Virus record (IMG/VR): IMGVR_UViG_3300037297_000066
Span: 186,001 to 250,000 of that record
DNA length: 64,000 nt
Reading direction: 5' to 3' (one strand)
In this document: positions 16,537 to 36,158 of the stretch, in pieces
Position numbering within the stretch: position 1 is the first letter of the stretch
How the letters are laid out: every line of letters begins with the position of its first letter
Notes under the pieces: generated by a model
Databases searched by the model: none
Told to the model about the DNA's origin: nothing
Seen by the model: only the letters and a program-made list of their open reading frames with translations
Translations under genes and position numbers: made by a program

Positions 16537-17035
16537 GCCAATCGACAATCGAGTGTCGATTTCGGTTGCCCGGGGTGGACGGGTGTGCCTGCGGTTCAAC
16601 CACCGGCCCGCCGTAAAAAAACCGCTCCATTAACTTTTTCGGTTGTACCGAGAGTGGAAATGGGCACATTCAATGTCCGTGAATCCAGAAACTGTCGGGG
16701 GGTCAAAATCCCAGTAATTCAGACCCTCCTTGGGGGGAGGGGGACCCTTTTGGAGTCCCTGAGCTCTGGAATGGATCTCGAAATTTTCTAGGGTTCGGAA
16801 ATTTCTGGGAGATCTGGGTTAAACCAGGGGTTTGGCTCATGCTCCCCTGGGGGGCCAAGCAGATTCCCTAGCCTGGGTTGGTAGTTCTGGGGGCCGTAGT
16901 GTACAGTGATGGAGGCAGGGCCCTCTTTTGTGCCCACCTCTTTGGCACCGGGTCCGTCATTGCCCGTTATCTTTCCGGGGGGTCCTGCCACTTACTTCTA
17001 GCCACGAGCCTTTTTTTAGGGCTACCTTCGGGGCC

Positions 17036-17290
17036 ATGGTCAACAACAAGAAGCCGGGCCGTCCCCCGACCCCCAAGAAGTCTCAGTTACTCCCTCCTCA
17101 AGTGACCACGGTTGCCCAATGGTACCGGACCGGACTTTTCAATAGCGAAGAGGAAGCCAGGGGGGCGTTCAGACTCGCTCACCAGCAAGGGCTCGATGGG
17201 ATGGGGACAGGGGTTTCGGCGTGGATGGGGTTGCACGAGCAGGAGTACGACTCCTGGATGCGAGACGACTCCCTCCCTCCGAAGAGGTAA
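17036..17290 (+). CDS. Hypothetical protein with AT-hook-like KPGRP
   Basis: MVNNKKPGRPP..WMGLHEQEYDSW. Confidence 0.7.
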   Translation: MVNNKKPGRPPTPKKSQLLPPQVTTVAQWYRTGLFNSEEEARGAFRLAHQQGLDGMGTGVSAWMGLHEQEYDSWMRDDSLPPKR

Positions 17291-17346: not shown

Positions 17347-17498
17347 CCCGATGGGCCCTCACACCTCCAGGGGAGAGAAAGGCTCTCTGGGGGCGTTCTC
17401 GTGGGGGTGGCGGGGCCTTAGGGGTTGCATGGTTCCTCTGGGGTCCCGCCCTCTCCTAGGAGTCCCATGGTTCTGGGGGTGTGAGCCTCGGGATTTTT
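17347..17498 (+). ncRNA. Candidate multi-stem structured RNA
   Basis: 13-bp outer and 16-bp inner stems fully paired only with + strand G-U pairs; T-tract after. Confidence 0.55.
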
Positions 17499-18817: not shown

Positions 18818-18844
18818 AAAGATCCCCAACTTGGGGATCTTTTT
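18816..18844. terminator. Bidirectional intrinsic terminator
   Basis: AAAAAGATCCCCAA-C-TTGGGGATCTTTTT perfect inverted repeat. Confidence 0.8.
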
Positions 18845-18861
18845 GGTGTACTCTCCTGGGG

Positions 18862-19115
18862 ATGGGAAGAAGAACGCTGCCCTGGCCTTTGGGGATGCCC
18901 CGGACTCGGGAGAACGAGCATTTGTACCAATCGCATGTGGCGTTGGTATTGGGTTGGCCGGTTCGGTCTTTCTGGCACTGGCTCAGGAGTTTTGGGGGAC
19001 GTTCATGAAGAGGGGAGTCAAGACGCAGCTTCTGGTGCTTGAGATTGCGGTACTCTTGGAGGGGGTGGCACTCATGTGGCATTTGGTCCACACGCATGGG
19101 GATTGGTTTTGGTGA
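18862..19115 (+). pseudogene. Two-TM membrane protein, possibly frameshifted
   Basis: Promoter-defined ATG 18862 is out of frame with the TM-coding frame ending 19115. Confidence 0.35.
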
Positions 19116-19214
19116 GCTTTGCCTCAAAAGGGGATTTTCTGGTTTGACAAGGCAAGCTTTTTCGGAAGAAATGAGGGGGAAACAACTCCAGCTCTGCGGT
19201 TTTAAGGCAGAGAC
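19116..19214 (-). repeat. ~99-bp dispersed repeat D, copy 1
   Basis: Near-identical to 40108-40206 and to the reverse complement of 43514-43611. Confidence 0.9.
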
Positions 19215-19215
19215 C

Positions 19216-19752: not shown

Positions 19753-19826
19753 GGGCCCAGTCTACCATTTCCGGCCCCTGAGGGAGCTCTTGAGTCCCGG
19801 GGTTCGGAGATTTTCTGGGGGGTCCG

Positions 19827-19855
19827 GGTTAAGATCTGGGCTTCCCAGGTGTAGT
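19827..19855 (+). promoter_or_regulatory. Class-A promoter 16
   Basis: Motif A, ATG after 6 nt. Confidence 0.8.
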
Positions 19856-19861
19856 AGGGGC

Positions 19862-20080
19862 ATGGCTACAAAGTCCGAAACAACCTGGAGTACGGTTGTT
19901 GAAGCCAAGAAGGGTCTTCGCCAACATTTGGGGCGTCTCTCATGGCTCAAGGTGGTCACGGCTAGCTATGACGCTCAAGGCTACCACCTTCTGGTCAAGG
20001 TACGACGAATCGATGCTGAGGTACGGGCGGCCGTGGGGGAGACTTTCCAAGGGGTTCGGGTAAAGACCGAACTAGGGTAA
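19862..20080 (+). CDS. Small alpha/beta protein (F.G.PV family)
   Basis: Similar to 30557 and 31298. Confidence 0.75.
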   Translation: MATKSETTWSTVVEAKKGLRQHLGRLSWLKVVTASYDAQGYHLLVKVRRIDAEVRAAVGETFQGVRVKTELG

Positions 20081-20088
20081 GGCAAGGC

Positions 20089-20370
20089 ATGACCACGAAA
20101 GTTGTTCAAGAAGAGAGCTGGGAAAACGGTGATCTTAAGGTAGGCTTCAAGATCATCTGGGAGTCTGGGGAAGAAGGTTCTTCTGAGGGGGGCTACGTGG
20201 TAGAGGTTTTTGAGCTCCTGATCGGGCTACCTATTCGGGTGACCCGGTTGTCCCGGGCTTCTGACCTAGTAGTGGCGCTTTTTGCGTGTGAAGGGGTCAA
20301 GGCTGGGTTTTACGCTGCTGGGTTCAAGCCTTTGGTTGGTGTGGCTGGAGGAGAGCTGACCAGGTCATAA
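20089..20370 (+). CDS. Hypothetical protein
   Basis: Operonic ORF. Confidence 0.65.
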   Translation: MTTKVVQEESWENGDLKVGFKIIWESGEEGSSEGGYVVEVFELLIGLPIRVTRLSRASDLVVALFACEGVKAGFYAAGFKPLVGVAGGELTRS

Positions 20371-20391
20371 TCCCAGGCACAGGTAAGACGG

Positions 20392-20799
20392 TCACGGGAG
20401 CTCGGCGACTGCCTGAAGGAGCTCGGGTGAGGGGCGGATACTCTGGGGTTCAGGGTAGCTACAGAGGATTAGCTCGGTATCTGGGGTCAGGCTTTTGAGG
20501 AAGCGCCGGCACTCCTTGTAGACGGGGGAACCTTCCAGGGCTTTCAGGGCAGTTTCCAGCTGGTCTGGGTGGTCATTGAGGTTTTGGATGAGCCAGCATT
20601 GGAGCTCTTGGGGGGAGATTTCCAGATCTTGTATAGCCTGGAGCATTCGGTTGATGGGGGGTTCTAGTTTCCCCATGAGTTCCAGCAAGAAGGCGGTGAT
20701 TTCTTCACCGTCGAACTCTTCACACAGTTGTTCGGCGGCAGCTTCGGTCGAGGTGGTTTGGTCTTTGACCAGCTGTTCGATTCGTTGTTTCAGGTCCAT
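20392..20799 (-). CDS. Hypothetical helical protein
   Basis: 135 aa; GTGTAGAAT upstream. Confidence 0.7.
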   Translation of the reverse strand: MDLKQRIEQLVKDQTTSTEAAAEQLCEEFDGEEITAFLLELMGKLEPPINRMLQAIQDLEISPQELQCWLIQNLNDHPDQLETALKALEGSPVYKECRRFLKSLTPDTELILCSYPEPQSIRPSPELLQAVAELP

Positions 20800-20846
20800 G
20801 GGGTTTCTCGACGGGGATTCTACACGATTTGGTGTATGGTGGGGGT

Positions 20847-21161
20847 ATGTCTGATCCCCCGGTGACGAACGAAGAGGTTGAGTCCTTCTTGAAGGTGTCT
20901 TTGGAGCGTTCTAGAACTCCGAGGGAGGCCCTGGTGGTTTGGGAGGTCTGCCGTTTGGTTGACCACGGTCGAGCTCACCTGACTCCGCCGGGGGTTCCCC
21001 CCAGTTCCCCTAGAGATGCTTTTCCGCCGCTCCCAAAGATTCCGCTCACGTTCTTTTCCCTGGGTGGGGGCCTGACGCAGCGAATCAAGGTTTCCGAGTT
21101 GCTGTGGGTGACGGCAGCGGTGGGGGCTTTGATGGTACTTTGTTGGTTTCTAATCCACTGA
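20847..21161 (+). CDS. C-terminally anchored membrane protein
   Basis: Class-B start; C-terminal TM. Confidence 0.7.
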   Translation: MSDPPVTNEEVESFLKVSLERSRTPREALVVWEVCRLVDHGRAHLTPPGVPPSSPRDAFPPLPKIPLTFFSLGGGLTQRIKVSELLWVTAAVGALMVLCWFLIH

Positions 21162-21170
21162 GAGGTAGTC

Positions 21171-21515
21171 ATGACGGTTTTGAACGGGGACGGATCTCCT
21201 GATTGGGAGGTCATCGAGCCTTCCGACATGTTGTTTGCGGTGACTCTGGATGGTCGTGACCCGGAAGGGAACGAGATCGAGGATGGCCCCACGGTGATCA
21301 TGTGTCCCCGGGAGTACTGGGAGGAAAACCTAGAGTGTTGGGACGACGACATCGCCTACGACTGGGTAGAAGAGAACGTCCCGGAGGAGCTGGAGCAGGG
21401 GATGGAGTCCACGTTCTACTTCGACAACAGGGACGATTGGCCGAGCATCCGGGATCGTTTGTTGAAGGCGGGGTTCAAGGAAGAGCCTCGGCTTTGGGAG
21501 GCCCCACCTGGGTGA
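21171..21515 (+). CDS. Acidic hypothetical protein
   Basis: GAGGT SD; D/E-rich. Confidence 0.75.
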   Translation: MTVLNGDGSPDWEVIEPSDMLFAVTLDGRDPEGNEIEDGPTVIMCPREYWEENLECWDDDIAYDWVEENVPEELEQGMESTFYFDNRDDWPSIRDRLLKAGFKEEPRLWEAPPG

Positions 21516-21529
21516 ATGTGGGGAGTCCG

Positions 21530-21558
21530 GGTTAAGATCCGGGTCCCCCAGGTGTAGT
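21530..21558 (+). promoter_or_regulatory. Class-A promoter 17
   Basis: Motif A, ATG after 6 nt. Confidence 0.8.
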
Positions 21559-21564
21559 AGGGGC

Positions 21565-21960
21565 ATGGAAGAGACAAAGCCACAGGTTGTTTGGAGCAAG
21601 TTCGACTTCATTAAGAGGCGAGGGAACCGCTACACTTTCGAGAGCCCTTTGAGTATCGGAGTCGAAAAGTACCTCTACATCGAGATCTGGAAGCGTCCCC
21701 TGGGAGGGTGGACGGGCCGCCTCGGGGACGAACTGCTCCCCCCATTCACTGAGGTGAGGCCGGAGTCTTTGAACAGCGCCACCAAGGAAGCGGCTCTGAT
21801 AGAGCTTCTGGACTGTTGGAGGGAGGCCCGCTCGTACCTGTTGAAGCTGGGGATGCGCAATCGCAGATCAGCTTCTCGCAAGCCGAAACGTCGTACTATT
21901 CCCTCACACCTGAGGGTGATCGAGGGTGGGCGCCGGGACGATTCTCCATTTCGCTACTAG
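21565..21960 (+). CDS. Hypothetical protein, C-terminal LRVIEGG
   Basis: Motif A start. Confidence 0.8.
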   Translation: MEETKPQVVWSKFDFIKRRGNRYTFESPLSIGVEKYLYIEIWKRPLGGWTGRLGDELLPPFTEVRPESLNSATKEAALIELLDCWREARSYLLKLGMRNRRSASRKPKRRTIPSHLRVIEGGRRDDSPFRY

Positions 21961-21968
21961 GTACCACC

Positions 21969-22163
21969 ATGGACGACTTTCGATACCAACAGAAGCGGTT
22001 CTGCATTGGGGGCCCCCGGGGGAACAAGTTCCGGTACGGGTGCCCTTGCTGCCGGATCATTGGGGACCCGGTTCGGTTCCGGCGGGCCACTCGCAAGTGG
22101 GCGAAGGGGCGTCTGCGAGGGACTACGTCCCAGTTCCTACGCAACTGGGAGAGTCAGTACTAG
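21969..22163 (+). CDS. Small basic CPCC protein
   Basis: IGGPRG..CPCC. Confidence 0.65.
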   Translation: MDDFRYQQKRFCIGGPRGNKFRYGCPCCRIIGDPVRFRRATRKWAKGRLRGTTSQFLRNWESQY

Positions 22164-22172
22164 GGGGATCCT

Positions 22173-22376
22173 TTGACCCTACACGAGCGAATCGCTGAGG
22201 CCCTGGGCTGGAGCGTAGAGCAAGTCCAACAGTTCAACTTCCAGCAGCTCCGGGAGCTCGTGAGTTCGGTCTCCCCAAAGCTTGCTTGGGAGCTCACCTG
22301 TCTGATCCGGGGCGGGGGATACATTCTGGGGGCACCCCTTCGGGGCCCAGAGAAAAACCCCGGCGTGTGGGGGTAA
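22173..22376 (+). CDS. Hypothetical protein
   Basis: LHERIAEALGWS. Confidence 0.65.
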   Translation: MTLHERIAEALGWSVEQVQQFNFQQLRELVSSVSPKLAWELTCLIRGGGYILGAPLRGPEKNPGVWG

Positions 22377-22414
22377 ACCAGACACCGGGGGGGTTAAGAG
22401 GGATTTCTAGGCCC

Positions 22415-22894
22415 TCAAGAGGGAAGCCTAGGCTTGGAGCTCGGGGTTGTCAAACTTCCCCTAGGCATCGGGGTTTCGAGAGGCTTCGAAACGGATGTGA
22501 GAGCAGGTTTCGGGGGTGTAGGGGTATCAAAGGGGGCCCAGAGCTCCAGCAGGTGCTGGAACCTGGCTTGCAGGAACTTCCGGACTTCCGGTTCATCCGC
22601 CTGGCAAACCTCGACTTCGAGACCGGCGTGAGAGCCCTTCCCCTGGAAGAAGACGAAGATCTTCAAGAGGCCGTCTCGGTAGTAGGGGTCGGGACCCGGT
22701 TGGTAGCCTTCTTCTGTTGAATCGGTCCAATCCCACCGGAAGACCAGGCTTCTAGAGGGGCAGGAGCCCTCCCAATCGGAGAGGAAGTCTGCCCAGGATC
22801 GGTAGTGTTCGTTGGGGGACCCACTGCTACCGGTACCGTAGTAATGGTCTCCGGTGCAATAGCCCGGGTGGTCAACTTCCCACAGGTGAGTCAT
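22415..22894 (-). CDS. Phage hypothetical protein
   Basis: HLWEVDHP.YC..LVFRWDW. Confidence 0.75.
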   Translation of the reverse strand: MTHLWEVDHPGYCTGDHYYGTGSSGSPNEHYRSWADFLSDWEGSCPSRSLVFRWDWTDSTEEGYQPGPDPYYRDGLLKIFVFFQGKGSHAGLEVEVCQADEPEVRKFLQARFQHLLELWAPFDTPTPPKPALTSVSKPLETPMPRGSLTTPSSKPRLPS

Positions 22895-22900
22895 GGATCC

Positions 22901-23452
22901 TCACGGGGAGCAGTTTAGGCGGGAGTCATACCACTTAAGGAGTGCTTTCAGAAGGCGGGGCCCTTCCTTGAACCAGAACTTGGGACTGGCCGAGCAGACG
23001 TGGAAGCCCACGAGGTTAGACTGGGCCACGACTCTCCAAGGTACCCGTACGGTGTACCCCCACTTGGCCCCTTCCTCTGGGGCGATGTCCGTATAGTAGT
23101 TGCTGGGAGCGGGTTCTTTGAAGGCTAGGATATCCAGGAGCCGTTGGAAGTCTTCTTGGATGACCTCAGAGGGTAGGGCATTCACAGCCACAACGTCGAT
23201 GAAGCTAGTGACTTCGTTGTCCCCGAGGGGGATGACGGTTTTTCTGTCCACCAGTTTGACATCCCACTGGTCGAAGTGATCCTTGTCGATTTGGGTGGTG
23301 AGGGGGAAGCCAGACTTGCCGTGGTCGTAGTGGAAGAAGTGGTCTGCCTCGGAGGGTTCAAGGCTAGGATTTGGGCCAGAACCGTGACAGTGCCCCGGCA
23401 GAGCTGGGTGTTTTTCGTAGTTGCGTAGAATGTGTTGGGCAGAGAGGTACAT
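22901..23452 (-). CDS. Hypothetical protein
   Basis: Long ORF; start uncertain (23452 or 23470). Confidence 0.7.
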   Translation of the reverse strand: MYLSAQHILRNYEKHPALPGHCHGSGPNPSLEPSEADHFFHYDHGKSGFPLTTQIDKDHFDQWDVKLVDRKTVIPLGDNEVTSFIDVVAVNALPSEVIQEDFQRLLDILAFKEPAPSNYYTDIAPEEGAKWGYTVRVPWRVVAQSNLVGFHVCSASPKFWFKEGPRLLKALLKWYDSRLNCSP

Positions 23453-23484
23453 CGCTTTCTCTTTTATCACAATGGTTGGGTGTC

Positions 23485-24039
23485 ATGCAGAAAATCGCCA
23501 ATTCTGATGAGCTCCAGGTAGAACTCCAAAGGATTCTAGCTACATGTCGAGGCCCAGATCGACCAAGCCGTATTTTGATCGCTAGGGACTTGAGAGTTCT
23601 CGCTCATTGTCTTGTGGCGATGGAGCATCCGTCCGAAGAAGCCAAGAAGAAGTACCTCAGTGAGCATCCGGACGCTGATCCCAAAAACCATACGGTGAAG
23701 GATGGGGGTGTGGACAAGGCGCAAGGGGCTGTCAACGATTGGCTGAAAAAGAACCCAAAGGTCATGATGGGATTGATTCAGTCAATGTCTTCGGAAGCCA
23801 AGAAGGACAAACAACCGTTCGGGATGAGAGACGCCCGTTCTGCTTTGAAAGCTTGGTTCGATGGTAAGGAGCCTTCGGATCCGAAAGGTAAAGCGGCTTG
23901 GCGTTACATGACCTCAGACAAAGGCAAGAAAGCCTTAGGGAAGCTCACCAAGGGAGTGGGAGACGCTCTGAAGAAGGGTGGGGGGAAGGTCGGCTTCCGA
24001 GACATTGCCAAGGCCGTAGATACCTGGATGAGCTATTAG
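23485..24039 (+). CDS. MQKIA-leader protein, Lys-rich
   Basis: N-terminus shared with 35694. Confidence 0.8.
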   Translation: MQKIANSDELQVELQRILATCRGPDRPSRILIARDLRVLAHCLVAMEHPSEEAKKKYLSEHPDADPKNHTVKDGGVDKAQGAVNDWLKKNPKVMMGLIQSMSSEAKKDKQPFGMRDARSALKAWFDGKEPSDPKGKAAWRYMTSDKGKKALGKLTKGVGDALKKGGGKVGFRDIAKAVDTWMSY

Positions 24040-24061
24040 AGAGGTTGCCAATCTCGGGAGC

Positions 24062-24394
24062 TCAAGAACCTTTTCTAACGGCTTTCTCGAAGCGTTCCAA
24101 AGCTTTGAGTTCCCCTTGGAGCTTTTTCCGGAGCTCTCTTTTCCGAAAGGCTAGACCTCGGAGGTAGTCCCGATAGGCCACATCCAAGGCTTCGAAGGGG
24201 TCAGAAAGAATACGATCCAGGGTACTCCCTCTTTCGTTATCCTGGGGGTGTGAGACATGGGCGACCCATCCATCCCTGTTCACGGGCCAAGCTCTGAATC
24301 TCAGACGGGAGGAGGGTTTAGACTTGAGGATGCCGGGTTCGGAGTGATCGACCGTCATCCCTTTCCAAGTGGATCTGGGCTTACTTGTGCTCAT
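24062..24394 (-). CDS. W.G..S..RL / AL..AY coiled-tail family protein
   Basis: Paralogue of 24391, 32056, 43133. Confidence 0.75.
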   Translation of the reverse strand: MSTSKPRSTWKGMTVDHSEPGILKSKPSSRLRFRAWPVNRDGWVAHVSHPQDNERGSTLDRILSDPFEALDVAYRDYLRGLAFRKRELRKKLQGELKALERFEKAVRKGS

Positions 24395-24762
24395 GAGATC
24401 GGGTCTTCCTGGGCAGCCTTCTCGAAGCGCTCAATGTCCTTGAGGTCTTTCTGAAGCGTCCTCCTTCTTCGGGCTAGCTTCTGGAGGTAGTTTTGGTGAG
24501 CGGCTTTGAGGGCAGCCTGGGGCTCGGAGCACAAGCCTTTTTGGCACCAGCCCACGTTTTCTGTGGTGAAGGGATCTCTCGGGTGTCGGATCTCGGCACC
24601 CCACCATTTAGCTTTCTCTGGAGCAGCGGCGACCCAGTTTCTACCATCCAAACCATAGAGCCAGACGTACAAACGAGCACTGGGCTTTGACCGGTAACTG
24701 GCTGCTTCCCCTTTGTGGAGACGGATACCATTCCAGGCTGTAGGGATCTCTGGAGTACTCAC
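24391..24762 (-). CDS. Same family protein
   Basis: GTGA overlap; SKPSARL, ERFEKA. Confidence 0.75.
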   Translation of the reverse strand: MSTPEIPTAWNGIRLHKGEAASYRSKPSARLYVWLYGLDGRNWVAAAPEKAKWWGAEIRHPRDPFTTENVGWCQKGLCSEPQAALKAAHQNYLQKLARRRRTLQKDLKDIERFEKAAQEDPIS

Positions 24763-25349
24763 AGGACGCCTTCGGCTTTCTCCACGAGTTCTCGCATGGC
24801 TTGGCGAATGGGCTCCATAGCTTTGGTGAGGCCGGGTTTGGCCAGCTTCTTGATTCGTTCTTCGTAACCTTTCGTACCAACGCTTGCCTTTTTCATGAGC
24901 TCCATCCAATTGGGAAGGGTGGAGAGCATACTGTGTGAAGCCTCCTCGGGGTAGACATAGACTCCGAACGTATCCACTTGGCACCAGTGGAGGCGTTCAG
25001 GGACCTTCCGTTTGTATTCGGGTCCTATGACGGGCCACGACTCGAACCCATCGTAGCGGAGGTAAGGGACGGGTACGGGGAAGGGTTTCTCAACCTCATT
25101 GATAGAGAAGCCTCGTTGCCGCCGGCCCCAGTTGAGGGCAACCCACCGGAGAATGGCGAAGACGAACTCCTTGGGGACCCCATGGGTGGTGGAGTATTTG
25201 AGCCCGAGCCTTCCCTTCTCGACCCACCAGGGGGATCCGTAGGGCCACTTGAAGACTTCCAGGGGTTCGGGGGTGTGTTTTTCTAGGAACTCACCCACCT
25301 GTTCGGCTTTTCGGGGGGAACGACAAACGACTTCGAGACTGGCGCCCAT
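24759..25349 (-). CDS. MGASL..RYDGFE.WPV family protein
   Basis: Paralogue of 32436; class-B start. Confidence 0.8.
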   Translation of the reverse strand: MGASLEVVCRSPRKAEQVGEFLEKHTPEPLEVFKWPYGSPWWVEKGRLGLKYSTTHGVPKEFVFAILRWVALNWGRRQRGFSINEVEKPFPVPVPYLRYDGFESWPVIGPEYKRKVPERLHWCQVDTFGVYVYPEEASHSMLSTLPNWMELMKKASVGTKGYEERIKKLAKPGLTKAMEPIRQAMRELVEKAEGVL

Positions 25350-25397
25350 GGGGGCACTATACACCGGAGCGGGTCACTTGTGGTGTACAGTTGACTT

Positions 25398-25610
25398 ATG
25401 TTACGGGTGAACATGTTGTCCAAACCAAGAAGAGCCGGTCCCACTCCTCCTCTGCTCTTAGGGGCTTTTCTGGCTTTGACCATCATCTTCATGTCGGTGT
25501 GGGCGACCCTGCACAACCCAGATGTGAAACCTGTTGTGGAGGACAATCTTGGGGCTTCGCCTTGCATTTGCCAGTGCAAGTGTGAGCCGTGCCCTTCGGT
25601 CAGGGAGTGA
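25398..25610 (+). CDS. Small membrane protein with CxCxCxC
   Basis: Class-B start, TM. Confidence 0.65.
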   Translation: MLRVNMLSKPRRAGPTPPLLLGAFLALTIIFMSVWATLHNPDVKPVVEDNLGASPCICQCKCEPCPSVRE

Positions 25611-25643
25611 CTTTTCATAGGTTTTGGGATAGCCTCCCGGACC

Positions 25644-25967
25644 ATGACGGAACGAAGGCTTGCTTGGACTCGGGAGCGACGGGCAGCTATGTGGGCGATA
25701 GTCGAGCTCACGAAGCTGATCGGGGACATCCGGAACCGGGATCTTGCCTGGGTAGAAGGAGATCTTCGGAGGCTTCGGGGGGACATTCGTCACCACCTGA
25801 AGCTCAAGGACAACTGTTCCAAATGCCAAGGACGGGGGCTCTGTCCTGGCAGGCCCATGCTTCATCCGGCCATTGGGCAGATCCCCTGCGATGTGATCTG
25901 CTCGGCTTGCTCAGGAACGGGTCAGGACCCCAAGGAGGAGCTCAATCAGGAGGAAACTCTTCCTTGA
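25644..25967 (+). CDS. DnaJ-type CxxCxGxG Zn-finger protein
   Basis: CSKCQGRG..CSACSGTG. Confidence 0.7.
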   Translation: MTERRLAWTRERRAAMWAIVELTKLIGDIRNRDLAWVEGDLRRLRGDIRHHLKLKDNCSKCQGRGLCPGRPMLHPAIGQIPCDVICSACSGTGQDPKEELNQEETLP

Positions 25968-26148
25968 CGATGGCCGTGACGCTCAGGTGACCGGTGGGAC
26001 GGTACAGGCGAATCACATCGACAACCCTCCATCGCCCTTGTGTGAAGAGGATCACCTCTCCAATGCGAGGGCTTTCGGGAACGTCGTTGAAGTTATTCAG
26101 GAGAGCTCCATGGGGGGCGTCCATTCGAAATTCTAGGTAGATGCTCAT
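25942..26148 (-). CDS. Small beta protein
   Basis: PRIGEVI..WRVVDV; similar to 46228. Confidence 0.7.
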   Translation of the reverse strand: MSIYLEFRMDAPHGALLNNFNDVPESPRIGEVILFTQGRWRVVDVIRLYRPTGHLSVTAIVKEEFPPD

Positions 26149-26801
26149 TTGAAGAGTTTTTCCTTGAGAGCCTGGATATCGTCGAGGCAGAGGTATCGCT
26201 GACCGTGGAATATAGCAGCTTCTCTATGGTCCTCGGGAAGACACAAAACGTAGTCGATGAAGTCTTTGAGTTGTTTCTTGGGCCGTTTTTCCTTTAGGCC
26301 GTCATCTTCAGTCATCAGAGGCAGCAGCTTGTCGATCTGGTCGAAAACGGGTTTCAGGTCTGGACGCAGGTAAGGAGCGAAGAAGTCTCTACATTGTTGT
26401 TTGACACTCTCTCCTTGGAGGTGGGTGAGGGCCCGTTCGATGATAGCGATGGCTTCTTCGCTGTACATCTTGGAGAGAACGTTTCGTTCAAAGAGACGGG
26501 CCTTGGCGTACTCGGATCTAGACAAAAGAGTGGCCAAGGTAATGGCCTTTTCCTCCCGATCCTCTTCGAGGATTTCTTCCTCGGTCCAGGGGCGAATGAT
26601 GACTTTGACTCGTTGACCGTAAAAGAAGGCTGCCTCCTCCAGTTCCTCTTCGTTCAGGTACATGACGAGGTTCGTGCCTCTGGACACGACCTGCAGTCTT
26701 CCGGCGGCCTTCCTACTGAGGGGGTGTTGGTTGTTCTCGTCCGTACCGATGCTCTTGACGGTGCAGAAATCTAGGGAGATGCCTTTGGTGATGTTTTCCA
26801 T
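26145..26801 (-). CDS. Hypothetical protein
   Basis: ATG 26801 just after the upstream stop. Confidence 0.75.
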   Translation of the reverse strand: MENITKGISLDFCTVKSIGTDENNQHPLSRKAAGRLQVVSRGTNLVMYLNEEELEEAAFFYGQRVKVIIRPWTEEEILEEDREEKAITLATLLSRSEYAKARLFERNVLSKMYSEEAIAIIERALTHLQGESVKQQCRDFFAPYLRPDLKPVFDQIDKLLPLMTEDDGLKEKRPKKQLKDFIDYVLCLPEDHREAAIFHGQRYLCLDDIQALKEKLFK

Positions 26802-26809
26802 GATGGGGG

Positions 26810-27037
26810 CTACTTTCTGCGGACTTGAGCTAAAGTGTCTCGCAGATCTTCGTAGAGTCCCCGTACTTCGGGACTCATTCTTGATCCTCGATTGATCAAA
26901 GCAATGACGGTTTCGGCCTGCAGGATCTCGGCTTGTCTTTGGGTCACCTTGAGGGTCACCTTGTAGACGGTTTGCCGACTGGCCTTGGTTTCGTACTCTC
27001 TGCCCACGGGTGCGGGGTCTGCGAAGTCTTTGCTCAT
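26810..27037 (-). CDS. Hypothetical protein
   Basis: Class-B start. Confidence 0.7.
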   Translation of the reverse strand: MSKDFADPAPVGREYETKASRQTVYKVTLKVTQRQAEILQAETVIALINRGSRMSPEVRGLYEDLRDTLAQVRRK

Positions 27038-27117
27038 ACGCCTCACCATACACCGGGGGGTTGGGTTGACGGCTTGGATTCTGAGTTTTTGGTGTATGGT
27101 GGAAGAAGCGAGGAACG

Positions 27118-27417
27118 ATGCCCAGAAAACCAGTAATCATCTATCGGGAGAGCCTCACGTTACCAGGATTGGTAGGCAATCCCCGATCGAACACTTTGCT
27201 CAAAGCCTTCAACGAGGCATGGGGTTTCCCAGGGGGCGCCTGCCACAAGATTGAGGGAGGCCAGTACGTTGACGCAAAGCCTTTCCCTGAGGGGTTTGAG
27301 GAAGCCCAGGCTCAACTCTACAGATCCGAGCTTGTCTACGTAGAGGTCTCGGTCTACAAAGACGGATCTCGAAAGCTCAAACTCGTGGGCTCTCCGGAGA
27401 GGGATCATGACCGCTAG
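27118..27417 (+). CDS. Hypothetical protein
   Basis: Class-B promoter with short SD leader. Confidence 0.7.
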   Translation: MPRKPVIIYRESLTLPGLVGNPRSNTLLKAFNEAWGFPGGACHKIEGGQYVDAKPFPEGFEEAQAQLYRSELVYVEVSVYKDGSRKLKLVGSPERDHDR

Positions 27418-27787
27418 CCTTCCAGAGACGCTGACTTGGCGGGGACAGACCCTGAAGGATCTCAAGGAAATGAACCCTCAGGTGGGGGTGGAATACGTGG
27501 GGTATGTAGAGAGCTCCAAGATCAGCGTTTATTCGTGGGAGCCGGAGCCGGGTCTGCAGAGGATTTGGTACGCTAACATAGGAGCCTCTGGAACCGCTTA
27601 CGAAGAAGGCGGATGGGAGGCTGCCTTGGAAGAGGCTCTTCGAAGGCACAAAAAAGTCATTGCCAGTCACGAGAAGTTCTTGCAGGAAGCCCGTTGGCTG
27701 CAGGAAGTGTTGGATCCTACTTTCGATCCAAACCCCCCTCCAGAGCTTCCCCCTTTGGCGCCCCCCAAGGACTCGGGAGAGCGTTAG
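27407..27787 (+). CDS. Hypothetical protein
   Basis: LPETLTWRG..EAALEEA. Confidence 0.75.
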   Translation: MTASLPETLTWRGQTLKDLKEMNPQVGVEYVGYVESSKISVYSWEPEPGLQRIWYANIGASGTAYEEGGWEAALEEALRRHKKVIASHEKFLQEARWLQEVLDPTFDPNPPPELPPLAPPKDSGER

Positions 27788-27824
27788 TTCAGGTTGCTGA
27801 AGTATGGGGCAGGCCCTTAGGCCG

Positions 27825-27853
27825 GGTTAAGATCCAGCTCTCTCAGGTGTAAT
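27825..27853 (+). promoter_or_regulatory. Class-A promoter 18
   Basis: Motif A, ATG after 6 nt. Confidence 0.8.
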
Positions 27854-27859
27854 GTAGGC

Positions 27860-28036
27860 ATGGCTAAGAGAAGCAAGAGGCTACCGCCTCACTCACGCCC
27901 TTGTTGTTCGGACCCCCGTCCCGAATACCACAGCAGTTGGAAGGACGAGACGGGTCTTTGTGCCAACTGTGGCCGGAGGTACAGTCCCGGTACGGTGGCC
28001 TACTGGAGGAAGTACCCTCAGGGGCACAAGCGTTAG
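27860..28036 (+). CDS. 58-aa Zn-ribbon protein (not in ORF track)
   Basis: PCCSDP..CANCGRRY; motif A start. Confidence 0.75.
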   Translation: MAKRSKRLPPHSRPCCSDPRPEYHSSWKDETGLCANCGRRYSPGTVAYWRKYPQGHKR

Positions 28037-28114
28037 TTCAGGTTCGGCCCTCAACCTAAAACAGCGGGTCCCCTATTTTAGGTTGCTCAAGTAGCGACCT
28101 GGTGTACAGTGGGG

Positions 28115-28417
28115 GTGAGCAGGGGCTTCTTTTCAGACCTAATTCGGGGTCGTCTCGTGCTAAACGAAGCCCCTGCCAAACCCTTCATGCTGAAGCTACT
28201 GGAGAAGACGGTTGAAGCCCTCACAGGGGAGCCTGTAGAGGTCCTCAGGGCTCGGAGCCTGGAGGAGGGTCGTAGGCTGGCGGAGCTACGGAACGGGGCT
28301 CCTATGCGATTCTCGGGGGATCCAGAGGGTGTCATCCTTACCCACGAGAGGGTTGAGGCTGATTTGGACCGAGCTCTGGACCAAGATCCGCGTTTTGTGG
28401 ATCTTGGTGTACGGTAG
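28115..28417 (+). CDS. Hypothetical protein
   Basis: GTG after GGTGTACAGT. Confidence 0.65.
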   Translation: MSRGFFSDLIRGRLVLNEAPAKPFMLKLLEKTVEALTGEPVEVLRARSLEEGRRLAELRNGAPMRFSGDPEGVILTHERVEADLDRALDQDPRFVDLGVR

Positions 28418-28421
28418 GGGA

Positions 28422-28539
28422 GGCAGGGCCCTAGGGCTTTGGCAATCGGCTCCCGGGCTCCAACCCCGGGGGCCTTCTTCCGGGGGTCCTGCCACTAAAC
28501 TCCCCCGGTGTGTTGAGGACCTATCAGGGGGAGATTTTT
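28422..28539 (+). ncRNA. Candidate sRNA: promoter, stem and terminator
   Basis: GGTGTACGGT places +1 on the first base of stem GGCAGGGCCCT/GGGGTCCTGCC; second hairpin then TTTTT. Confidence 0.6.
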
Positions 28540-28548
28540 CAAGGTTCG

Positions 28549-28577
28549 GGTTAAGATCCGGCTCCCTCACGTGTAGT
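28549..28577 (+). promoter_or_regulatory. Class-A promoter 19
   Basis: Motif A, ATG after 6 nt. Confidence 0.8.
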
Positions 28578-28583
28578 AGGTAC

Positions 28584-28736
28584 ATGACGCAATATCCCGA
28601 AGCAATTCCTGGTGAGAGCCGTTACGTTGACTTCGACGAGGAGACCCAGTGCTGGGGCATCTTTGGAGAGGACAGCGGACACTGCTACGAGTTGTACAGT
28701 GACAGGCAGGAGGCTCGGGACCGGCTGCAATCGTAG
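28584..28736 (+). CDS. 50-aa acidic protein
   Basis: Motif A start. Confidence 0.75.
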   Translation: MTQYPEAIPGESRYVDFDEETQCWGIFGEDSGHCYELYSDRQEARDRLQS

Positions 28737-28747
28737 GATCATGGGCC

Positions 28748-28789
28748 GAGGGGTCCTTCTGGCTTCTTCATTCCCCAGAGGGGCCCCTC
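28748..28789 (+). terminator. 15-bp hairpin after the gene
   Basis: GAGGGGTCCTTCTGG/CCAGAGGGGCCCCTC, loop CTTCTTCATTCC. Confidence 0.55.
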
Positions 28790-28816
28790 TCCCACCACCT
28801 CCAAGAAAGGGTACAA

Positions 28817-29176
28817 GTGGCGCGTAAACACTTGATGCGTGTGGTTTTGAAAGAAGCTGGGCCGGTGGATCTCTACGGAGAGAAAGAGCTGTCGGTCGCT
28901 GACTACAGCCAGCTGTCGCAGATCGCCAAGACTCTTCAGGACGGAGGAGTCCAGTTCAAGGTGAAGCTGACAGATCCGAACATGGAGGTGTGGGTGCCGT
29001 CAGCCCAACAGTTTGTCGAGGCTCTCAGCTTGGTTGGTGACCCGAAGGCGGTTCTGGCTCAGGTCCAGTCGGTTATAGAGGGGCCTGCTTGCTCTGGTAG
29101 CGGGCCCCAATGCCCGGAGATGATGAGTAGGTTGGGCCGGTACCGTAGGCAGCACAGAAGCAAGGCGGCCAAGTAG
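28817..29176 (+). CDS. Hypothetical protein
   Basis: 119 aa; purine-rich SD. Confidence 0.7.
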   Translation: MARKHLMRVVLKEAGPVDLYGEKELSVADYSQLSQIAKTLQDGGVQFKVKLTDPNMEVWVPSAQQFVEALSLVGDPKAVLAQVQSVIEGPACSGSGPQCPEMMSRLGRYRRQHRSKAAK

Positions 29177-29237
29177 ACAGGGCTGTCCCCTGATCCCCTC
29201 CAGCTTTAAGCTTCAACCTCCTAACTGGAACAGGTCC

Positions 29238-29597
29238 ATGGGCAAAACAAGGATAGACTATCACGGTGGGGCGTCGAAAGAGGTATCCACCAAGGTTTGG
29301 TACCTAGAGGATATCCCCGACACTACCTTTTACCGTCAGCTGGAAGAGAGGGTTCGTCCGTTGGTGTACGTCCTACGTCAGCACGGTATCAACACTGAGA
29401 GCTCCTGTCACCACAGGGGGTACATTCAAGTTGATGGGAGTGCGTTCTCAAACAACGTCCATTTTTCTAGGGAGCTGTACTTCGCAATGTACGAGGTTAA
29501 CTGCCTACCCTACAACGTTCGGTGTGAACGGTACGTGGATGAGACGGGCCACTTCCACGAGATTTGCCGTATCCAGAGCGAGTTGTTGAAGATTTGA
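29238..29597 (+). CDS. Hypothetical protein (RPLV..L..G..T.SSC motif)
   Basis: Recurrent phage motif. Confidence 0.7.
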   Translation: MGKTRIDYHGGASKEVSTKVWYLEDIPDTTFYRQLEERVRPLVYVLRQHGINTESSCHHRGYIQVDGSAFSNNVHFSRELYFAMYEVNCLPYNVRCERYVDETGHFHEICRIQSELLKI

Positions 29598-29632
29598 GGC
29601 TCGTGTTCCAACCTCTCGGTGTATGGTGGGGC

Positions 29633-30499
29633 ATGCAGATCCGACAACTGAGCTACGAAGAAGCCGTCGAACGTCACCCCGAGCAGGTGCAAGCCATCAT
29701 CACGAAGCTCCGCAAGAGCAGGAGCAAGTCGAAGGAAACAGCCCCCGAGGCCATGAAGTGGAGCTACGAGTGTTCCGTCACGATTGAGGGCTCTGGACGC
29801 CTTGATCAGGTCTTGGCGGCATCTCAACGTATAAAGAGCATGTCCACGGAGGAGCAGATTGCTGACGAAGTGCGCCGGACTCACACCGCACTTTCAGGAT
29901 CGGCTGGGAGATGGGGATGGTCTGAGAAGGTTCCCAACCCTCCTGAGGTAGAGGAGAGGGTCAGAGCTCATTTCCGGGAGCGTGAAGAAGATCAGAAGAA
30001 GATGGATCAGATGTCCCCTGAGGAGCGGGAAGAGAGCTTCCAGGCGACTTTGGGAGCCTTCTTTGGGGGAGGGGGTGTGGCCCTCACCATGGGAGGGGGT
30101 GGCCGGGCCCAACTTTCTCGAACCCCTGAGGAGTTCAACCAGGCTCAGCAAAGGGGGCCCGGGGTGGGGGCCTTGAATCCGGATTTCGATGGGGAACCGG
30201 AGACGCTCAACTTTTTCGGAGTCGAGCTGACGTTGAACCAGCAAGCCTACCCGCAGGTAGCTTTCTGGGAGGGAACGTTGGATACGGGACCAGCGAGTCA
30301 AATCCGTGTCAAGCTGGAAAAGTTCCCTGAAAATCCCCTCATTCCTCGATATGCTGTGCTAGTTTCCTTCAAAGGGAAAACCCCTGCTCAGGTCTTCCAC
30401 ATGACATCCACTGGGAACTCTTGGGAGGATCTGCAGGAGCGATTCCGAAGTCAGGCTCAAGAGATTTCTAGAACTCTCAAGGTTCTCTGCGGGGAGTAG
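29633..30499 (+). CDS. Hypothetical protein
   Basis: Class-B start; PETLNFFG segment similar to 33908. Confidence 0.8.
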   Translation: MQIRQLSYEEAVERHPEQVQAIITKLRKSRSKSKETAPEAMKWSYECSVTIEGSGRLDQVLAASQRIKSMSTEEQIADEVRRTHTALSGSAGRWGWSEKVPNPPEVEERVRAHFREREEDQKKMDQMSPEEREESFQATLGAFFGGGGVALTMGGGGRAQLSRTPEEFNQAQQRGPGVGALNPDFDGEPETLNFFGVELTLNQQAYPQVAFWEGTLDTGPASQIRVKLEKFPENPLIPRYAVLVSFKGKTPAQVFHMTSTGNSWEDLQERFRSQAQEISRTLKVLCGE

Positions 30500-30556
30500 G
30501 CCGAGGCTTCTCAACCTACGGACATTCTGGTTGTGGGTTCAGAGTCGGCATATACC

Positions 30557-30802
30557 TCAGAAGCTTAAGGCGCTGAAGGATCCCCGAAGCTTGAACTTGC
30601 TACTGGTGACAACGGGGTGGCCTTCGAAGATGTGAGGCACCTGGACTTGCACGGGTGCCTCGGGGACATTCGGTTTGAGGACGGCGAGCAGGGTGGTCTT
30701 GCCTTCGGTGTCTTGGACGAAGCCTGTGTGGTCGAGCCAAGGCTTTGGTCCGATTCGTTTTCGGAGTCTCCAAGCGGCCTGCAAAGCTTCGTGGGAGGTC
30801 AT
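30557..30802 (-). CDS. F.G.PV family protein
   Basis: Class-B start; PHIFEGHPV. Confidence 0.7.
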   Translation of the reverse strand: MTSHEALQAAWRLRKRIGPKPWLDHTGFVQDTEGKTTLLAVLKPNVPEAPVQVQVPHIFEGHPVVTSSKFKLRGSFSALSF

Positions 30803-30845
30803 GTTTGGACTATACACCAGGACCTCTTGCAGGTAGGGTAGACAA

Positions 30846-31028
30846 ATGGCGGGAGACGACTCCAAACAGCTTCAAGAGGCTATCGACCATTGTTTGGAGA
30901 AAGCCAAGGGTGGGAGCAAGTGTGCTCAAGATCACGCTCAGCTAGCCTACTGGCTCATCGAGCTTCGAGAATGCAGAAAGGTATCTGGGAATGGCAACCG
31001 GCGTAGGACTGATTCTTCAGGAACGTAA
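30846..31028 (+). CDS. Small phage protein
   Basis: EAIDHC..CAQDHAQLAYWLIEL. Confidence 0.7.
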   Translation: MAGDDSKQLQEAIDHCLEKAKGGSKCAQDHAQLAYWLIELRECRKVSGNGNRRRTDSSGT

Positions 31029-35519: not shown

Positions 35520-35672
35520 GCCCAGGAAGAGAGGGGAACGCAACAGGGCCCCTCCTCGTCGGACTATGGTACTATGCCGGCGGGGTCCCCAGAGTACCCA
35601 GTCTTCAACTCCGAGAAATCCCCTTCTGGGGGCCCCGTTTCTTAGGCCGGCGTTCCGAATTCTCTTGTGGGC
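35520..35672 (+). ncRNA. Candidate structured RNA with stem related to 17409 and 28422
   Basis: GGCGGGGTCCCCAGAG/TTCTGGGGGCCCCGTT 16 bp with G-U; outer GGAACGC/GCGTTCC and GCCCA/TGGGC. Confidence 0.5.
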
Positions 35673-35693: not shown

Positions 35694-36158
35694 ATGCAGA
35701 AGATCGCTGGTCCCCGAGAACTCCAGGCCGAGCTCCACCGACTCTTGGAGCAGGTGAAGACGAACCCCAACCGGGCAGAGCTGGCTCAGGAGCTGAGGAC
35801 CCTGGTGGCGAGGCTGGACAAGACGTCCAACTGGTGGACGACTGTCCTTTTCCGGGACAACAACAACACGTTCAACTTGACGGTAGCTGGAGGGATGACT
35901 CCCGGGGGGTGGTCATCCCTCGACTACGTGCTGGGCGAGTTGAACGGCCGCATCAAGAAGGCGATGAGTCAGACCCAGACGTATCTGGAGGGCCTGGGCT
36001 ACCAATTCCGCTCTGCTCCTCATCGAGTCATGGGAGACGACAAAAAGGAAAAGTACGTAGGGTGGGCTACCTACGGACTCAAGCCCCAGGATCGGGACCT
36101 GCAAGCGGACCTCAAGGCCAGTCCGGTGAAGGCGTACATCCGAGAAGGTGGGATGTAG
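35694..36158 (+). CDS. MQKIA-leader protein
   Basis: N-terminus shared with 23485. Confidence 0.8.
   Translation: MQKIAGPRELQAELHRLLEQVKTNPNRAELAQELRTLVARLDKTSNWWTTVLFRDNNNTFNLTVAGGMTPGGWSSLDYVLGELNGRIKKAMSQTQTYLEGLGYQFRSAPHRVMGDDKKEKYVGWATYGLKPQDRDLQADLKASPVKAYIREGGM

What the first reader, a model, noticed from the sequence alone, without database searches (positions are those of the whole stretch)
28406..28539. Complete promoter-RNA-terminator unit without an ORF; member of a GGCRGGG-stem RNA family
Seen: class-B promoter GGTGTACGGT places +1 (6-nt rule) exactly on the first G of stem GGCAGGGCCCT../..GGGGTCCTGCC, which encloses a second 10-bp stem; a terminator hairpin and T5 follow. The stem resembles 17409-17450 (GGCGGGGCCTTAGGGG/CCTCTGGGGTCCCGCC) and 35579-35639, including a compensatory G-C to A-T change. 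Inference: a phage ncRNA family.
Basis: partly seen in the sequence, partly recalled or inferred. Interest (0 to 1): 0.75.

Follow-up and report, generated by a model that had tools for sequence, protein, structure and literature searches.

The report
Orphaned structured leader RNA unit
In a 437-kb wetland jumbo phage, this ORF-less promoter–hairpin–terminator unit is real and its RNA fold is conserved, but a related phage shows it is the leader and terminator of a small gene whose coding part was deleted here.

Summary
TTGGTGTACGGT (28404-28415) matches a strongly over-represented promoter motif that mostly drives leaderless mRNAs. Its usual spacing puts +1 on G28422, the first base of an 11-bp stem. 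That stem encloses a 10-bp hairpin, and a hairpin plus T5 follows (28500-28539). No frame on either strand is coding. No Rfam family, tRNA model or the phage's own CRISPR repeat matches.

It is the 5' leader of a conserved 84-aa gene. 17409-17450 is a truncated third copy lying 3' of that gene. 35579-35639 is only a look-alike.

Three diverged orthologs keep the fold, mostly through G-C/G-U changes that work only on the + strand, and the loop CUCCAAC never varies. In the most distant ortholog the element is the 5' UTR of a 117-aa ORF. The window keeps a 22-nt remnant of that ORF inside its terminator hairpin.

So this is a gene cassette that lost its CDS: a leader-hairpin module, probably a cis-acting transcript-end stabilising or processing element. 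A secondary trans-acting role is possible. No RNA data could be found.

The parts
28115..28417 (+). Upstream ORF of 100 aa. It is leaderless (GTG start) from a class-B promoter at 28100-28110. Its stop codon overlaps the -10 of the finding's promoter.
   Evidence: Codon-usage score is +0.14 per codon. Homologs are P0001 and P0002.
28381..28407 (.). Conserved palindrome or hairpin, CCAAGATCCGC-N5-GTGGATCTTGG, abutting the promoter's -10. It could be an operator or a weak terminator of the upstream gene.
   Evidence: It is kept in L012, L029 and L016, where the one G-T pair becomes A-T.
28404..28415 (+). Class-B promoter TTGGTGTACGGT, with the -10-like TACGGT at 28410-28415.
   Evidence: The motif is enriched and mostly precedes leaderless starts. 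It is identical in L016 and L029, and reads TTGGTGTATGGT in L012, where it is intergenic.
28416..28421 (+). Spacer AGGGGA between the -10 and the predicted +1 (G28422 or A28421). The same AGGGGA follows the class-B promoters of the phage's two CRISPR leaders.
28422..28493 (+). Structured 72-nt element. An 11-bp basal stem (28422-28432 with 28483-28493) encloses a variable junction and a 10-bp hairpin (28448-28474). The hairpin loop CUCCAAC (28458-28464) is invariant.
   Evidence: fold; orthologs: 97% of cells paired, 11 one-sided changes and 1 two-sided change that keep pairs, 3 broken cells.
28500..28539 (+). Intrinsic-terminator-like hairpin (CTCCCCC ... GGGGGAG) followed by A and T5. Its 5' arm and loop (28500-28521) are a remnant of a deleted CDS.
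   Evidence: The stem is kept in L029 through a C-G to U-A change while the loop diverged. The simple scan does not call it because the loop exceeds 8 nt.
28548..28583 (+). Class-A promoter (GGGTTAAGATC-N-TCACGTGTAGTAGG) giving the next gene its own leaderless start.
   Evidence: At least 33-37 copies in the genome, mostly 3-4 nt before an ATG. The depth spike and unlike flanks in metagenome contigs support a repeated element.
28584..28736 (+). Downstream 50-aa ORF. It is conserved in L012, L029 and L016.
16899..16992 (+). Paralog m2. The class-B promoter GTGTACAGT and spacer GATGGA are followed by a 76-nt element (16914-16989) with the same basal stem. It is the 5' leader of gene 17036-17290.
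   Evidence: It is unchanged in the variant contigs L031-L033.
17036..17290 (+). Conserved 84-aa gene served by the m2 leader.
   Evidence: 18 homolog clusters at 54-68% identity in other mobile elements. None of them has the hairpin.
17409..17450 (+). Paralog m3. This 42-nt, 16-bp hairpin has the same arms (G4-C in place of A4-U), no promoter, and lies 3' of gene 17036-17290.
   Evidence: The variant contigs have G7 to A, turning a G-U pair into A-U.

Best explanation
The unit is the promoter, structured 5' leader and terminator of a small 'class-B' gene cassette whose coding sequence was deleted in this phage lineage.

Proposed mechanism:
- RNA polymerase starts at G28422 (or A28421), 6 nt after the -10-like TACGGT.
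- From its first or second nucleotide the RNA folds into an 11-bp basal stem. This stem encloses a 10-bp hairpin with the invariant 7-nt loop CUCCAAC.
- Transcription then ends at a hairpin plus U5 (28500-28539), giving an RNA of about 118 nt with no ORF.

The basal-stem module (GGCRGGGCCYU ... GGGGUCCYGCC) is shared with two other sites: the 5' leader of gene 17036-17290, behind the same promoter type at the same spacing, and a hairpin 3' of that gene. I therefore take the module to be a cis-acting transcript-end hairpin. It would protect or define the ends of the few leadered transcripts in a phage whose mRNAs are otherwise leaderless. The ORF-less RNA here would be what such a cassette still makes after losing its CDS.

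Shown: promoter-class membership, conservation of the fold, absence of coding, paralogy, and the CDS remnant.
Inferred: the exact +1, termination at the hairpin, and the stabilising or processing role.
For: Promoter
- The motif is strongly over-represented, mostly drives leaderless starts, and its spacing is calibrated on those starts.
- It is conserved in all orthologs, including L012 where it is not coding.

Fold
- RNAalifold and a hand-given structure agree. 97% of cells are paired.
- All 6 substitutions in the outer stem keep pairing (G-C to G-U and G-U to G-C).
- The inner stem keeps 10 pairs in L012, including one C-G to U-A double change.
- The loop and its three closing G-C pairs are invariant in 4 distinct sequences.
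- The G-U pairs make the fold specific to the + strand.

Paralogy
- m1 and m2 share exact 14-nt and 15-nt blocks behind the same promoter.
- m3 shows the compensatory A-U to G-C pair.

Deletion
- L012 has promoter, hairpin and then a 117-aa ORF with good coding potential (0.206 per codon).
- Window 28500-28521 is 18/22 identical to codons 11-18 of that ORF (0 of 1000 shuffles).
- L016 and L029 share the deleted state and the same 162-nt distance from the stem to the next ATG.

Other
- The terminator stem is kept by a compensatory change while its loop diverged.
- The next gene has its own class-B-independent, class-A leaderless promoter.
Against: - No RNA data exist. No RNA run was listed, so +1, the 3' end and the abundance of the RNA are all predictions.
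- There are only 4 distinct orthologs, so covariation has little power; the shuffle control is uninformative.
- Most changes are transitions, and transitions keep G-U pairs by default.
- Two orthologs carry a mismatch in the inner stem: C-A in L016 and C-C in L029.
- Overall the 72-nt element evolves about as fast as third codon positions.
- Other leadered class-A and class-B transcripts in the genome do not generally begin with a strong hairpin. A general '5' stabiliser rule' is therefore not shown.
- RNAalifold adds two pairs that use bases upstream of the predicted +1. This hints that the helix may matter in read-through transcripts from upstream.
- The persistence of promoter, fold and terminator in three lineages after the deletion could mean that the RNA itself has a function.
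Confidence: 0.45

Rival explanations
1. It is a bona fide trans-acting small RNA, a leader that has been exapted. The ~118-nt RNA would be kept for its own sake. Its invariant CUCCAAC loop and pyrimidine-rich single strands (UUCUUCC) would pair with G-rich or GGAG-type ribosome-binding regions of phage or host mRNAs.
For: - Promoter, fold, exact length and terminator persist in three lineages after the CDS was lost.
- The loop and its closing pairs are invariant in 4 sequences, while the junction changes at about 20-30%.
- The promoter sits at the end of the upstream CDS and the unit has its own terminator, the layout of promoter-bearing 3'-UTR sRNAs (own knowledge).
- Class-B promoters do drive non-coding RNAs in this phage, namely the CRISPR leaders.
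Against: - No target was identified.
- The paralog m2 has a different interior and is a leader of a gene.
- In L012 the same element is simply a 5' UTR.
- Inner-stem mismatches occur in two lineages.
- There is no expression evidence.
Confidence: 0.2
2. It is a processing or 3'-end hairpin of the upstream mRNA. Like the RNase III sites between T7 early genes, the hairpins (m1, m2, m3) would be cut or would block exonucleases in longer transcripts. The promoter match would be secondary.
For: - The geometry, 11 bp + internal loop + 10 bp, is about two helical turns.
- m3 lies 3' of a gene and has no promoter.
- Conserved basal stems with variable tops suit a protein-recognised helix.
- The two extra predicted pairs use bases upstream of the predicted +1 and show three pair types.
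Against: - m1 and m2 keep the same promoter at the same 6-nt spacing, and the promoter is conserved even where it is non-coding.
- m2 lies in a divergent intergenic region with no gene upstream on its strand.
- The palindrome before the promoter may already end upstream transcripts.
- The extra pairs involve a G-U pair, which any transition preserves.
Confidence: 0.15
3. It is an attenuator or antitermination leader. Class-B transcripts would stop at 28539 unless a factor, or the RNA itself (as with lambda PR'-tR' plus Q, or HK022 put), lets polymerase read into gene 28584 and beyond.
For: - The layout is promoter, short structured RNA, terminator, then genes on the same strand.
- The element is promoter-proximal in two copies.
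- A conserved palindrome lies next to the promoter.
Against: - The downstream gene has its own conserved leaderless promoter and no Shine-Dalgarno sequence, so a read-through transcript would translate it poorly.
- m2 and the L012 ortholog have no terminator between hairpin and ORF.
- The terminator here was made from a CDS remnant, so it is not an ancestral part of the leader.
Confidence: 0.08
4. It is a decaying relic with no present function. The similarity among copies would reflect duplication of GC-rich hairpins, which are common in this genome, or a DNA-level repeat.
For: - The CDS was lost.
- Sequence divergence is similar to that at third codon positions.
- The fold z-scores of L016 and L029 are not significant.
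- The inner hairpin shares 17 nt with a terminator-like hairpin at genome 113790-113830.
Against: - Every outer-stem change keeps pairing.
- The loop is invariant.
- The terminator stem is kept by a compensatory change.
- There was no net indel over 162 nt in three lineages.
- The G-U pairs argue against a DNA palindrome.
Confidence: 0.12

Closest known systems
5'-terminal stem-loop mRNA stabilisers (E. coli ompA leader hairpin; 5' stabilisers of B. subtilis and its phage SP82 transcripts). From own knowledge.
   Same: A stable helix starts within 0-1 nt of the predicted 5' end. In m2 and in the L012 ortholog it precedes a coding sequence with a G-rich ribosome-binding region.
   Different: - The basal stem sequence is conserved among paralogs, which such stabilisers do not need.
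- One copy (m3) sits at a 3' end.
- The copy in question has no CDS.
- No half-life data exist.
RNase III processing sites of phage T7 early mRNA (R0.3, R0.5, R1.1 and others). From own knowledge.
   Same: A small family of related, irregular hairpins of about 20 bp lies in phage intergenic regions, one of them right after a promoter. They have conserved lower stems and internal loops.
   Different: There are only three copies. There is no cleavage evidence, and it is not known whether the unknown host has the enzyme. Two copies start at a promoter's +1.
Short ORF-less phage transcripts and promoter-bearing 3'-UTR sRNAs (lambda 6S RNA from PR'-tR', lambda OOP; DapZ/MicL-type sRNAs). From own knowledge.
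   Same: The layout is promoter, short structured RNA and intrinsic terminator with no ORF. The promoter overlaps the end of the upstream CDS.
   Different: Here the ORF-less state can be traced to loss of a CDS. No antiterminator, target or chaperone is known.
RNA anti-CRISPRs (Racrs; solitary repeat units in phages), PMC10651486.
   Same: An ORF-less, promoter-driven small hairpin RNA in a phage genome.
   Different: It has no significant similarity to the only CRISPR repeat available, the phage's own type I-C arrays. Its stems are far longer than those of a repeat. The host's repeats are unknown.

Membership tests
Any Rfam 15 family | Covariance-model score at or above the family's gathering threshold | tested here: not met
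   There are 0 hits in the whole window at the gathering threshold. Around m1 and around m2/m3 only noise appears, with E = 0.3-8 and scores far below gathering.
tRNA / tmRNA | Cloverleaf (or tmRNA) recognised by ARAGORN | tested here: not met
   Nothing is found at m1, m2 or m3 with standard settings. Only relaxed or mitochondrial modes give noise. The CUCCAAC loop looks like an anticodon loop, but there is no D arm or T arm.
Class-B promoters of this phage | Motif (T)TGGTGTAYNGT | tested here: met
   TTGGTGTACGGT lies at 28404-28415. The consensus of 60 leaderless examples is TGGTGTATgGTggGG.
Class-B promoters of this phage | Start point 5-7 nt after the motif | tested here: inconclusive
   The spacing is calibrated on leaderless start codons and has a mode of 6. 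This puts +1 on G28422. The start itself has not been mapped.
Class-B promoters of this phage | Promoter activity | not testable with these tools
   No RNA run was listed.
Sigma-70 -35/-10 promoter | TTGACA-like and TATAAT-like hexamers 16-18 nt apart | tested here: not met
   The scan finds 0 sites in 28000-28900.
Intrinsic (factor-independent) terminator | G+C-rich hairpin directly followed by a U-tract | tested here: met
   A 7-bp G+C stem (28500-28506 with 28527-28533), extended in the MFE structure, is followed by A and U5. The stem is kept in L029 by a compensatory change.
Intrinsic (factor-independent) terminator | Short loop (3-8 nt), as required by the simple scan | tested here: not met
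   The loop is 20 nt if only the 7-bp stem is counted, so the scan reports no terminator.
GRYCCYGCC on the + strand, more often than chance | tested here: met
   There are 5 on + and 0 on -, against a simulation mean of 0.7. Members are m1, m2 and m3. 48900 is taken as chance because it lies inside an ORF.
   Its GGC/GTT base pairs are lost in the ortholog L016, and its arms match m1 poorly. Only a different 12-bp core is conserved.
RNA anti-CRISPR (solitary repeat unit) | Sequence and structure mimic of a CRISPR repeat | tested here: not met
   Local alignment to the phage's own type I-C repeat is no better than for shuffles. Host repeats cannot be tested because the host is unknown.
5'-terminal stem-loop stabiliser | Helix starts within a few nt of the 5' end of an mRNA | tested here: inconclusive
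   This is met for the predicted +1 of m1, m2 and the L012 ortholog. The ends have not been mapped, and m1 has no CDS.
5'-terminal stem-loop stabiliser | Lengthens transcript half-life | not testable with these tools
   This needs an experiment.
T7-type RNase III site | Cleavage by RNase III within an irregular helix of about 20 bp | not testable with these tools
   The geometry is compatible (11 + 10 bp). No cleavage data exist.

The most novel reading that the evidence does not exclude
After losing its coding sequence, the leader cassette was retained as a new small-RNA gene, that is, a 5' UTR exapted into an sRNA. Its invariant U-turn-like loop CUCCAAC and its CU-rich single strands would act as anti-Shine-Dalgarno-type seeds. 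They would target the G-rich ribosome-binding sites of leadered (host or phage) mRNAs, in a phage whose own mRNAs are mostly leaderless and so immune to such pairing.
Probability: 0.12. Interest if true: 0.6.

Novelty: new member of a known kind. Interest (0 to 1): 0.38.

Why it matters
The finding gives a concrete, datable example of how an ORF-less 'promoter-RNA-terminator' unit can arise in a phage: loss of a CDS from a leadered gene cassette. This is a caution for ncRNA calling in phage genomes.

It also defines a new structured-RNA module that has no Rfam match. The module is tied to a well-defined promoter class in a jumbo phage that uses leaderless mRNAs almost throughout. If the module controls transcript stability or processing, it would be a handle on gene expression in an uncultured megaphage that also carries its own type I-C CRISPR-Cas system.

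Tried and rejected
- **Known RNA families.** Rfam gave nothing at gathering or permissive thresholds.
- **tRNA or tmRNA.** Rejected.
- **Coding on either strand.** Rejected.
- **Mimic of the phage's own CRISPR repeat.** Rejected.
- **Neighbouring proteins.** They have no Pfam or PHROG match.
- **Relatives.**
  - Megablast against named phages gave no hit.
  - IMG/VR gave no relative of the flanking protein or of the RNA pattern.
  - The nearest PolA relatives are at 32-43% identity. The IMG/VR one of them lacks the class-A promoter core.
  - A metagenome pattern scan gave one true relative (L016) and 7 chance hits.
  - Logan contigs L013 and L014 are identical to the window.
  - Homologs of the 84-aa protein lie in unrelated mobile elements without the hairpin.
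  - L012's 117-aa ORF has no other homolog, and there is no copy in this genome.
- **RNA evidence.** No RNA run was listed. The laid DNA contigs gave only strain variants.
- **Relaxed descriptor.** With 1 mismatch allowed, the scan is barely above the Markov expectation, 41 hits against 29 +/- 5. The family is therefore small.
- **A general rule.** The idea that leadered transcripts start with a hairpin was checked and not found.
- **My first hand alignment.** I aligned the window's terminator to the start codon region of L012's ORF. A statistically supported match to codons 11-18 replaced it.

Full report
**Context**

The window is bases 186001-250000 of a single 437,331-bp virus record with 55% G+C. 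The record has Baseplate_J, family-A DNA polymerase and an intein-containing UvrD-like helicase. It is found in wetland and marine-sediment metagenomes. No named phage is close. The nearest PolA relatives are at 32-43% identity.

**Promoter**

- GTGTACNGT occurs 26 times on + and 14 times on -. GGTGTAC[AG]GT occurs 16 and 10 times. I calculate about 0.8 per strand by chance.
- Most copies are preceded by TG/TTG and followed after 5-7 nt by ATG or GTG with an ORF. With GTGTA[CT]NGT there are 103 sites, and 64 of them are leaderless.
- The gap between the motif and the start codon is 5, 6 or 7 nt in 19, 26 and 13 cases.
- At the finding, TTGGTGTACGGT (28404-28415) is followed by AGGGGA and then by the first G of the stem.
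- The same AGGGGA follows the class-B promoters that drive the phage's two CRISPR leaders. This class therefore does make non-coding RNA.
- A second class ('A') has the form GGGTTAAGATC-N-TCACGTGTAGTAGG followed after 3-4 nt by ATG. It has at least 33-37 copies. One copy (28548-28583) gives the next gene (ATG 28584) its own leaderless start.
- In metagenome contigs this 33-nt stretch shows a depth spike with unlike flanks.

**Structure and absence of coding**

- The predicted transcript 28421-28541 folds at -66.2 kcal/mol, z = -3.3.
- The fold has three parts: an 11-bp outer stem, a 10-bp inner hairpin with loop CUCCAAC, and a terminator hairpin followed by A and U5.
- With flanks included, z is -1.1. 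The opposite strand gives z = -0.07.
- The frame that is open through the unit in the window carries stops in L029. The minus-strand ORF is broken in L029 and L012. Codon-usage scores are negative, where real neighbouring genes score +0.14 to +0.19 per codon.
- There is no Rfam match and no tRNA.

**Paralogs**

- An exact-arm search finds 16914-16989 (m2), 17409-17450 (m3), 28422-28493 (m1) and 35579-35639 (m4).
  - It has promoter GTGTACAGT, a 6-nt spacer ending GGA, the same 11 nt of 5' arm, and the same GGGGGTCCTGCCACT at the 3' side.
  - Its interior is different.
  - It is the 5' leader of ORF 17036-17290.
  - That ORF is a real gene, with 18 homolog clusters at 54-68% identity in other mobile elements, none carrying the hairpin.
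- m3 is a plain 16-bp hairpin 3' of that gene. It has no promoter and shows the A4-U to G4-C compensatory pair.
- With exact GGCRGGGYC and 9/9 pairing there are 5 hits on +, 0 on -, and a mean of 0.7 in simulations. The fifth hit (48900) lies inside an ORF.
- Allowing one mismatch, the excess nearly vanishes. The family is therefore small.
- m4's basal GGC/GTT pairs are not kept in the ortholog L016, so I do not count it as a member.

**Orthologs of m1**

The upstream protein led to four kinds of contig:
- L013 and L014 are identical to the window.
- L016 and L030 are a strain about 5-6% diverged overall.
- L029 is about 8% diverged.
- L012 is about 16% diverged in the flanking ORF.

The alignment of the four distinct sequences (A4) gives these results:
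- The structure I specified has 97% of cells paired. Eleven pair types change on one side, one pair changes on both sides (C-G to U-A), and three cells are broken. RNAalifold predicts the same helices on its own.
- All six outer-stem substitutions keep pairing through G-C/G-U moves, which work only on the + strand.
- L012 keeps all ten inner pairs if one U is bulged.
- L016 has a C-A mismatch and L029 a C-C mismatch in the inner stem.
- The loop CUCCAAC and its three G-C pairs never vary, whereas the 5' junction changes freely.
- In m3, the variant contigs turn G7-U into A7-U.
- With four sequences the shuffle control has no power. Most changes are transitions, so I rate the covariation as moderate support, not proof.
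- Overall identity of the 72-nt element is 97%, 89% and 73% in L016, L029 and L012. That is close to the identity at third codon positions of the neighbouring genes.

**The missing gene**

- In L012 the promoter and hairpin are followed by a G-rich ribosome-binding region and a 117-aa ORF. A T-run and the class-A promoter of the 50-aa gene come next.
- That ORF has good coding potential: +0.206 per codon in frame and negative in the other frames. It has no other homolog and no copy in this genome.
- Window 28500-28521, the 5' arm and loop of the 'terminator', is 18/22 identical to codons 11-18 of that ORF. None of 1000 shuffles scores as high.
- GGGAGATTTTT in the window matches GGAAGATTTTT at the end of the L012 cassette.
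- The window, L016 and L029 therefore carry a cassette that lost its CDS.
- All three have exactly 162 nt from the stem to the next ATG.
- In L029 the terminator stem is kept, with a C-G to U-A change in a register shifted by one, while the loop is more than half changed.

**Interpretation**

The module is a leader hairpin of class-B transcripts. It is shared by m2 and the L012 ortholog, which sit in front of genes, and by m1, whose gene is lost. A truncated copy, m3, sits at a 3' end.

I think it most likely acts in cis as a transcript-end hairpin. It would protect against 5'-end-dependent decay or define processing sites for the few leadered RNAs of a phage whose mRNAs are otherwise leaderless. 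I put this at about 0.45.

The rivals are:
- a trans-acting sRNA that arose from the orphaned leader;
- an RNase III-type processing or 3'-end hairpin of the upstream mRNA, hinted at by two extra predicted pairs that use bases upstream of +1;
- a regulated read-through leader;
- a relic with no function.

No RNA run could be listed, so none of these can be settled here.

Noticed in passing
outside the window: genome 99437-101550 and 108956-111110 (+); locus L034 938-3051 and 10457-12611: There are two CRISPR arrays of about 27 repeats each. The repeat is GTCGAGGGAGG-NNNN-TCCTCCCTCGGGAGTTCCAA[C/G], with a variable 4-nt hairpin loop and a period of about 72-73. Each array sits behind a class-B promoter and a ~200-nt conserved leader. 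Between the arrays lie a Cas_Csd1 (Cas8c, type I-C) ORF and a ResIII/DEAD helicase ORF, which may be Cas3-like (my inference from domain and position). There is no Rfam hit.
   Followed up: partly
window 10722-28580 (about 20 copies) and elsewhere in the genome, e.g. 28548-28580 and 27824-27856: The class-A promoter is a 33-nt conserved element, GGGTTAAGATC-N9-10-TCA[CG]GTGTA[GA]T..., lying 3-4 nt before a leaderless ATG. It has at least 33-37 copies. Metagenome contigs join different cassettes at these elements; for example, one contig from run X9 skips 27864 to 28548 with 199 other letters between. This suggests that the promoters are cassette boundaries or recombination points.
   Followed up: partly
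window 28381-28407 and about 18816-18850: The palindrome CCAAGATCCGC-N5-GTGGATCTTGG abuts the class-B -10 and is conserved in all orthologs. A second instance, AAAAGATCCCC-N5-GGGGATCTTTT, lies directly before TGGTGTACTCT. The half-site AAGATCC is also the core of the class-A promoter's upstream element. It may be an operator or a terminator-promoter composite.
   Followed up: partly
window 35579-35639: A hairpin in the 5' UTR of gene 35694-36158 sits behind a -10-like TACTAT. Its 12-bp core is identical in the 14%-diverged ortholog region of L016, while its base and its interior change.
   Followed up: partly
window 17036-17290: This 84-aa protein has the motif EARGAFRLAHQQGLDGMG...WMGL...LPP. 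It belongs to a widespread family with no Pfam match, found next to resolvase, SMODS/SLATT, HTH and ParB-like genes in other mobile elements.
   Followed up: partly
window 28737-30990, including 29528-29628: ARAGORN calls a 101-nt tRNA-Gly(GCC) at 29528-29628, but Rfam reports no tRNA in the window at gathering. In strain L016 this whole 2.25-kb stretch is replaced by about 410 nt.
   Followed up: no
several class-B promoters, e.g. window 25383, 41002, 46208, 56778, 60322: The motif (C)CATACACC lies 5-8 nt upstream of GGTGTAC. It forms an inverted repeat with the promoter's own GGTGTA.
   Followed up: no
outside the window: genome 113790-113830: The terminator-like hairpin GAGAGAAGGCTCCCG-AAC-CCCGGGGGCCTTCTCTC followed by ATTT shares 17 identical nt with the inner hairpin of the finding. 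GC-rich hairpin modules seem to be reused in this genome.
   Followed up: partly
outside the window: genome 386581-391014 (L003): A UvrD-like helicase ORF of 1477 aa has an intein-splicing domain inserted between its helicase domains.
   Followed up: no
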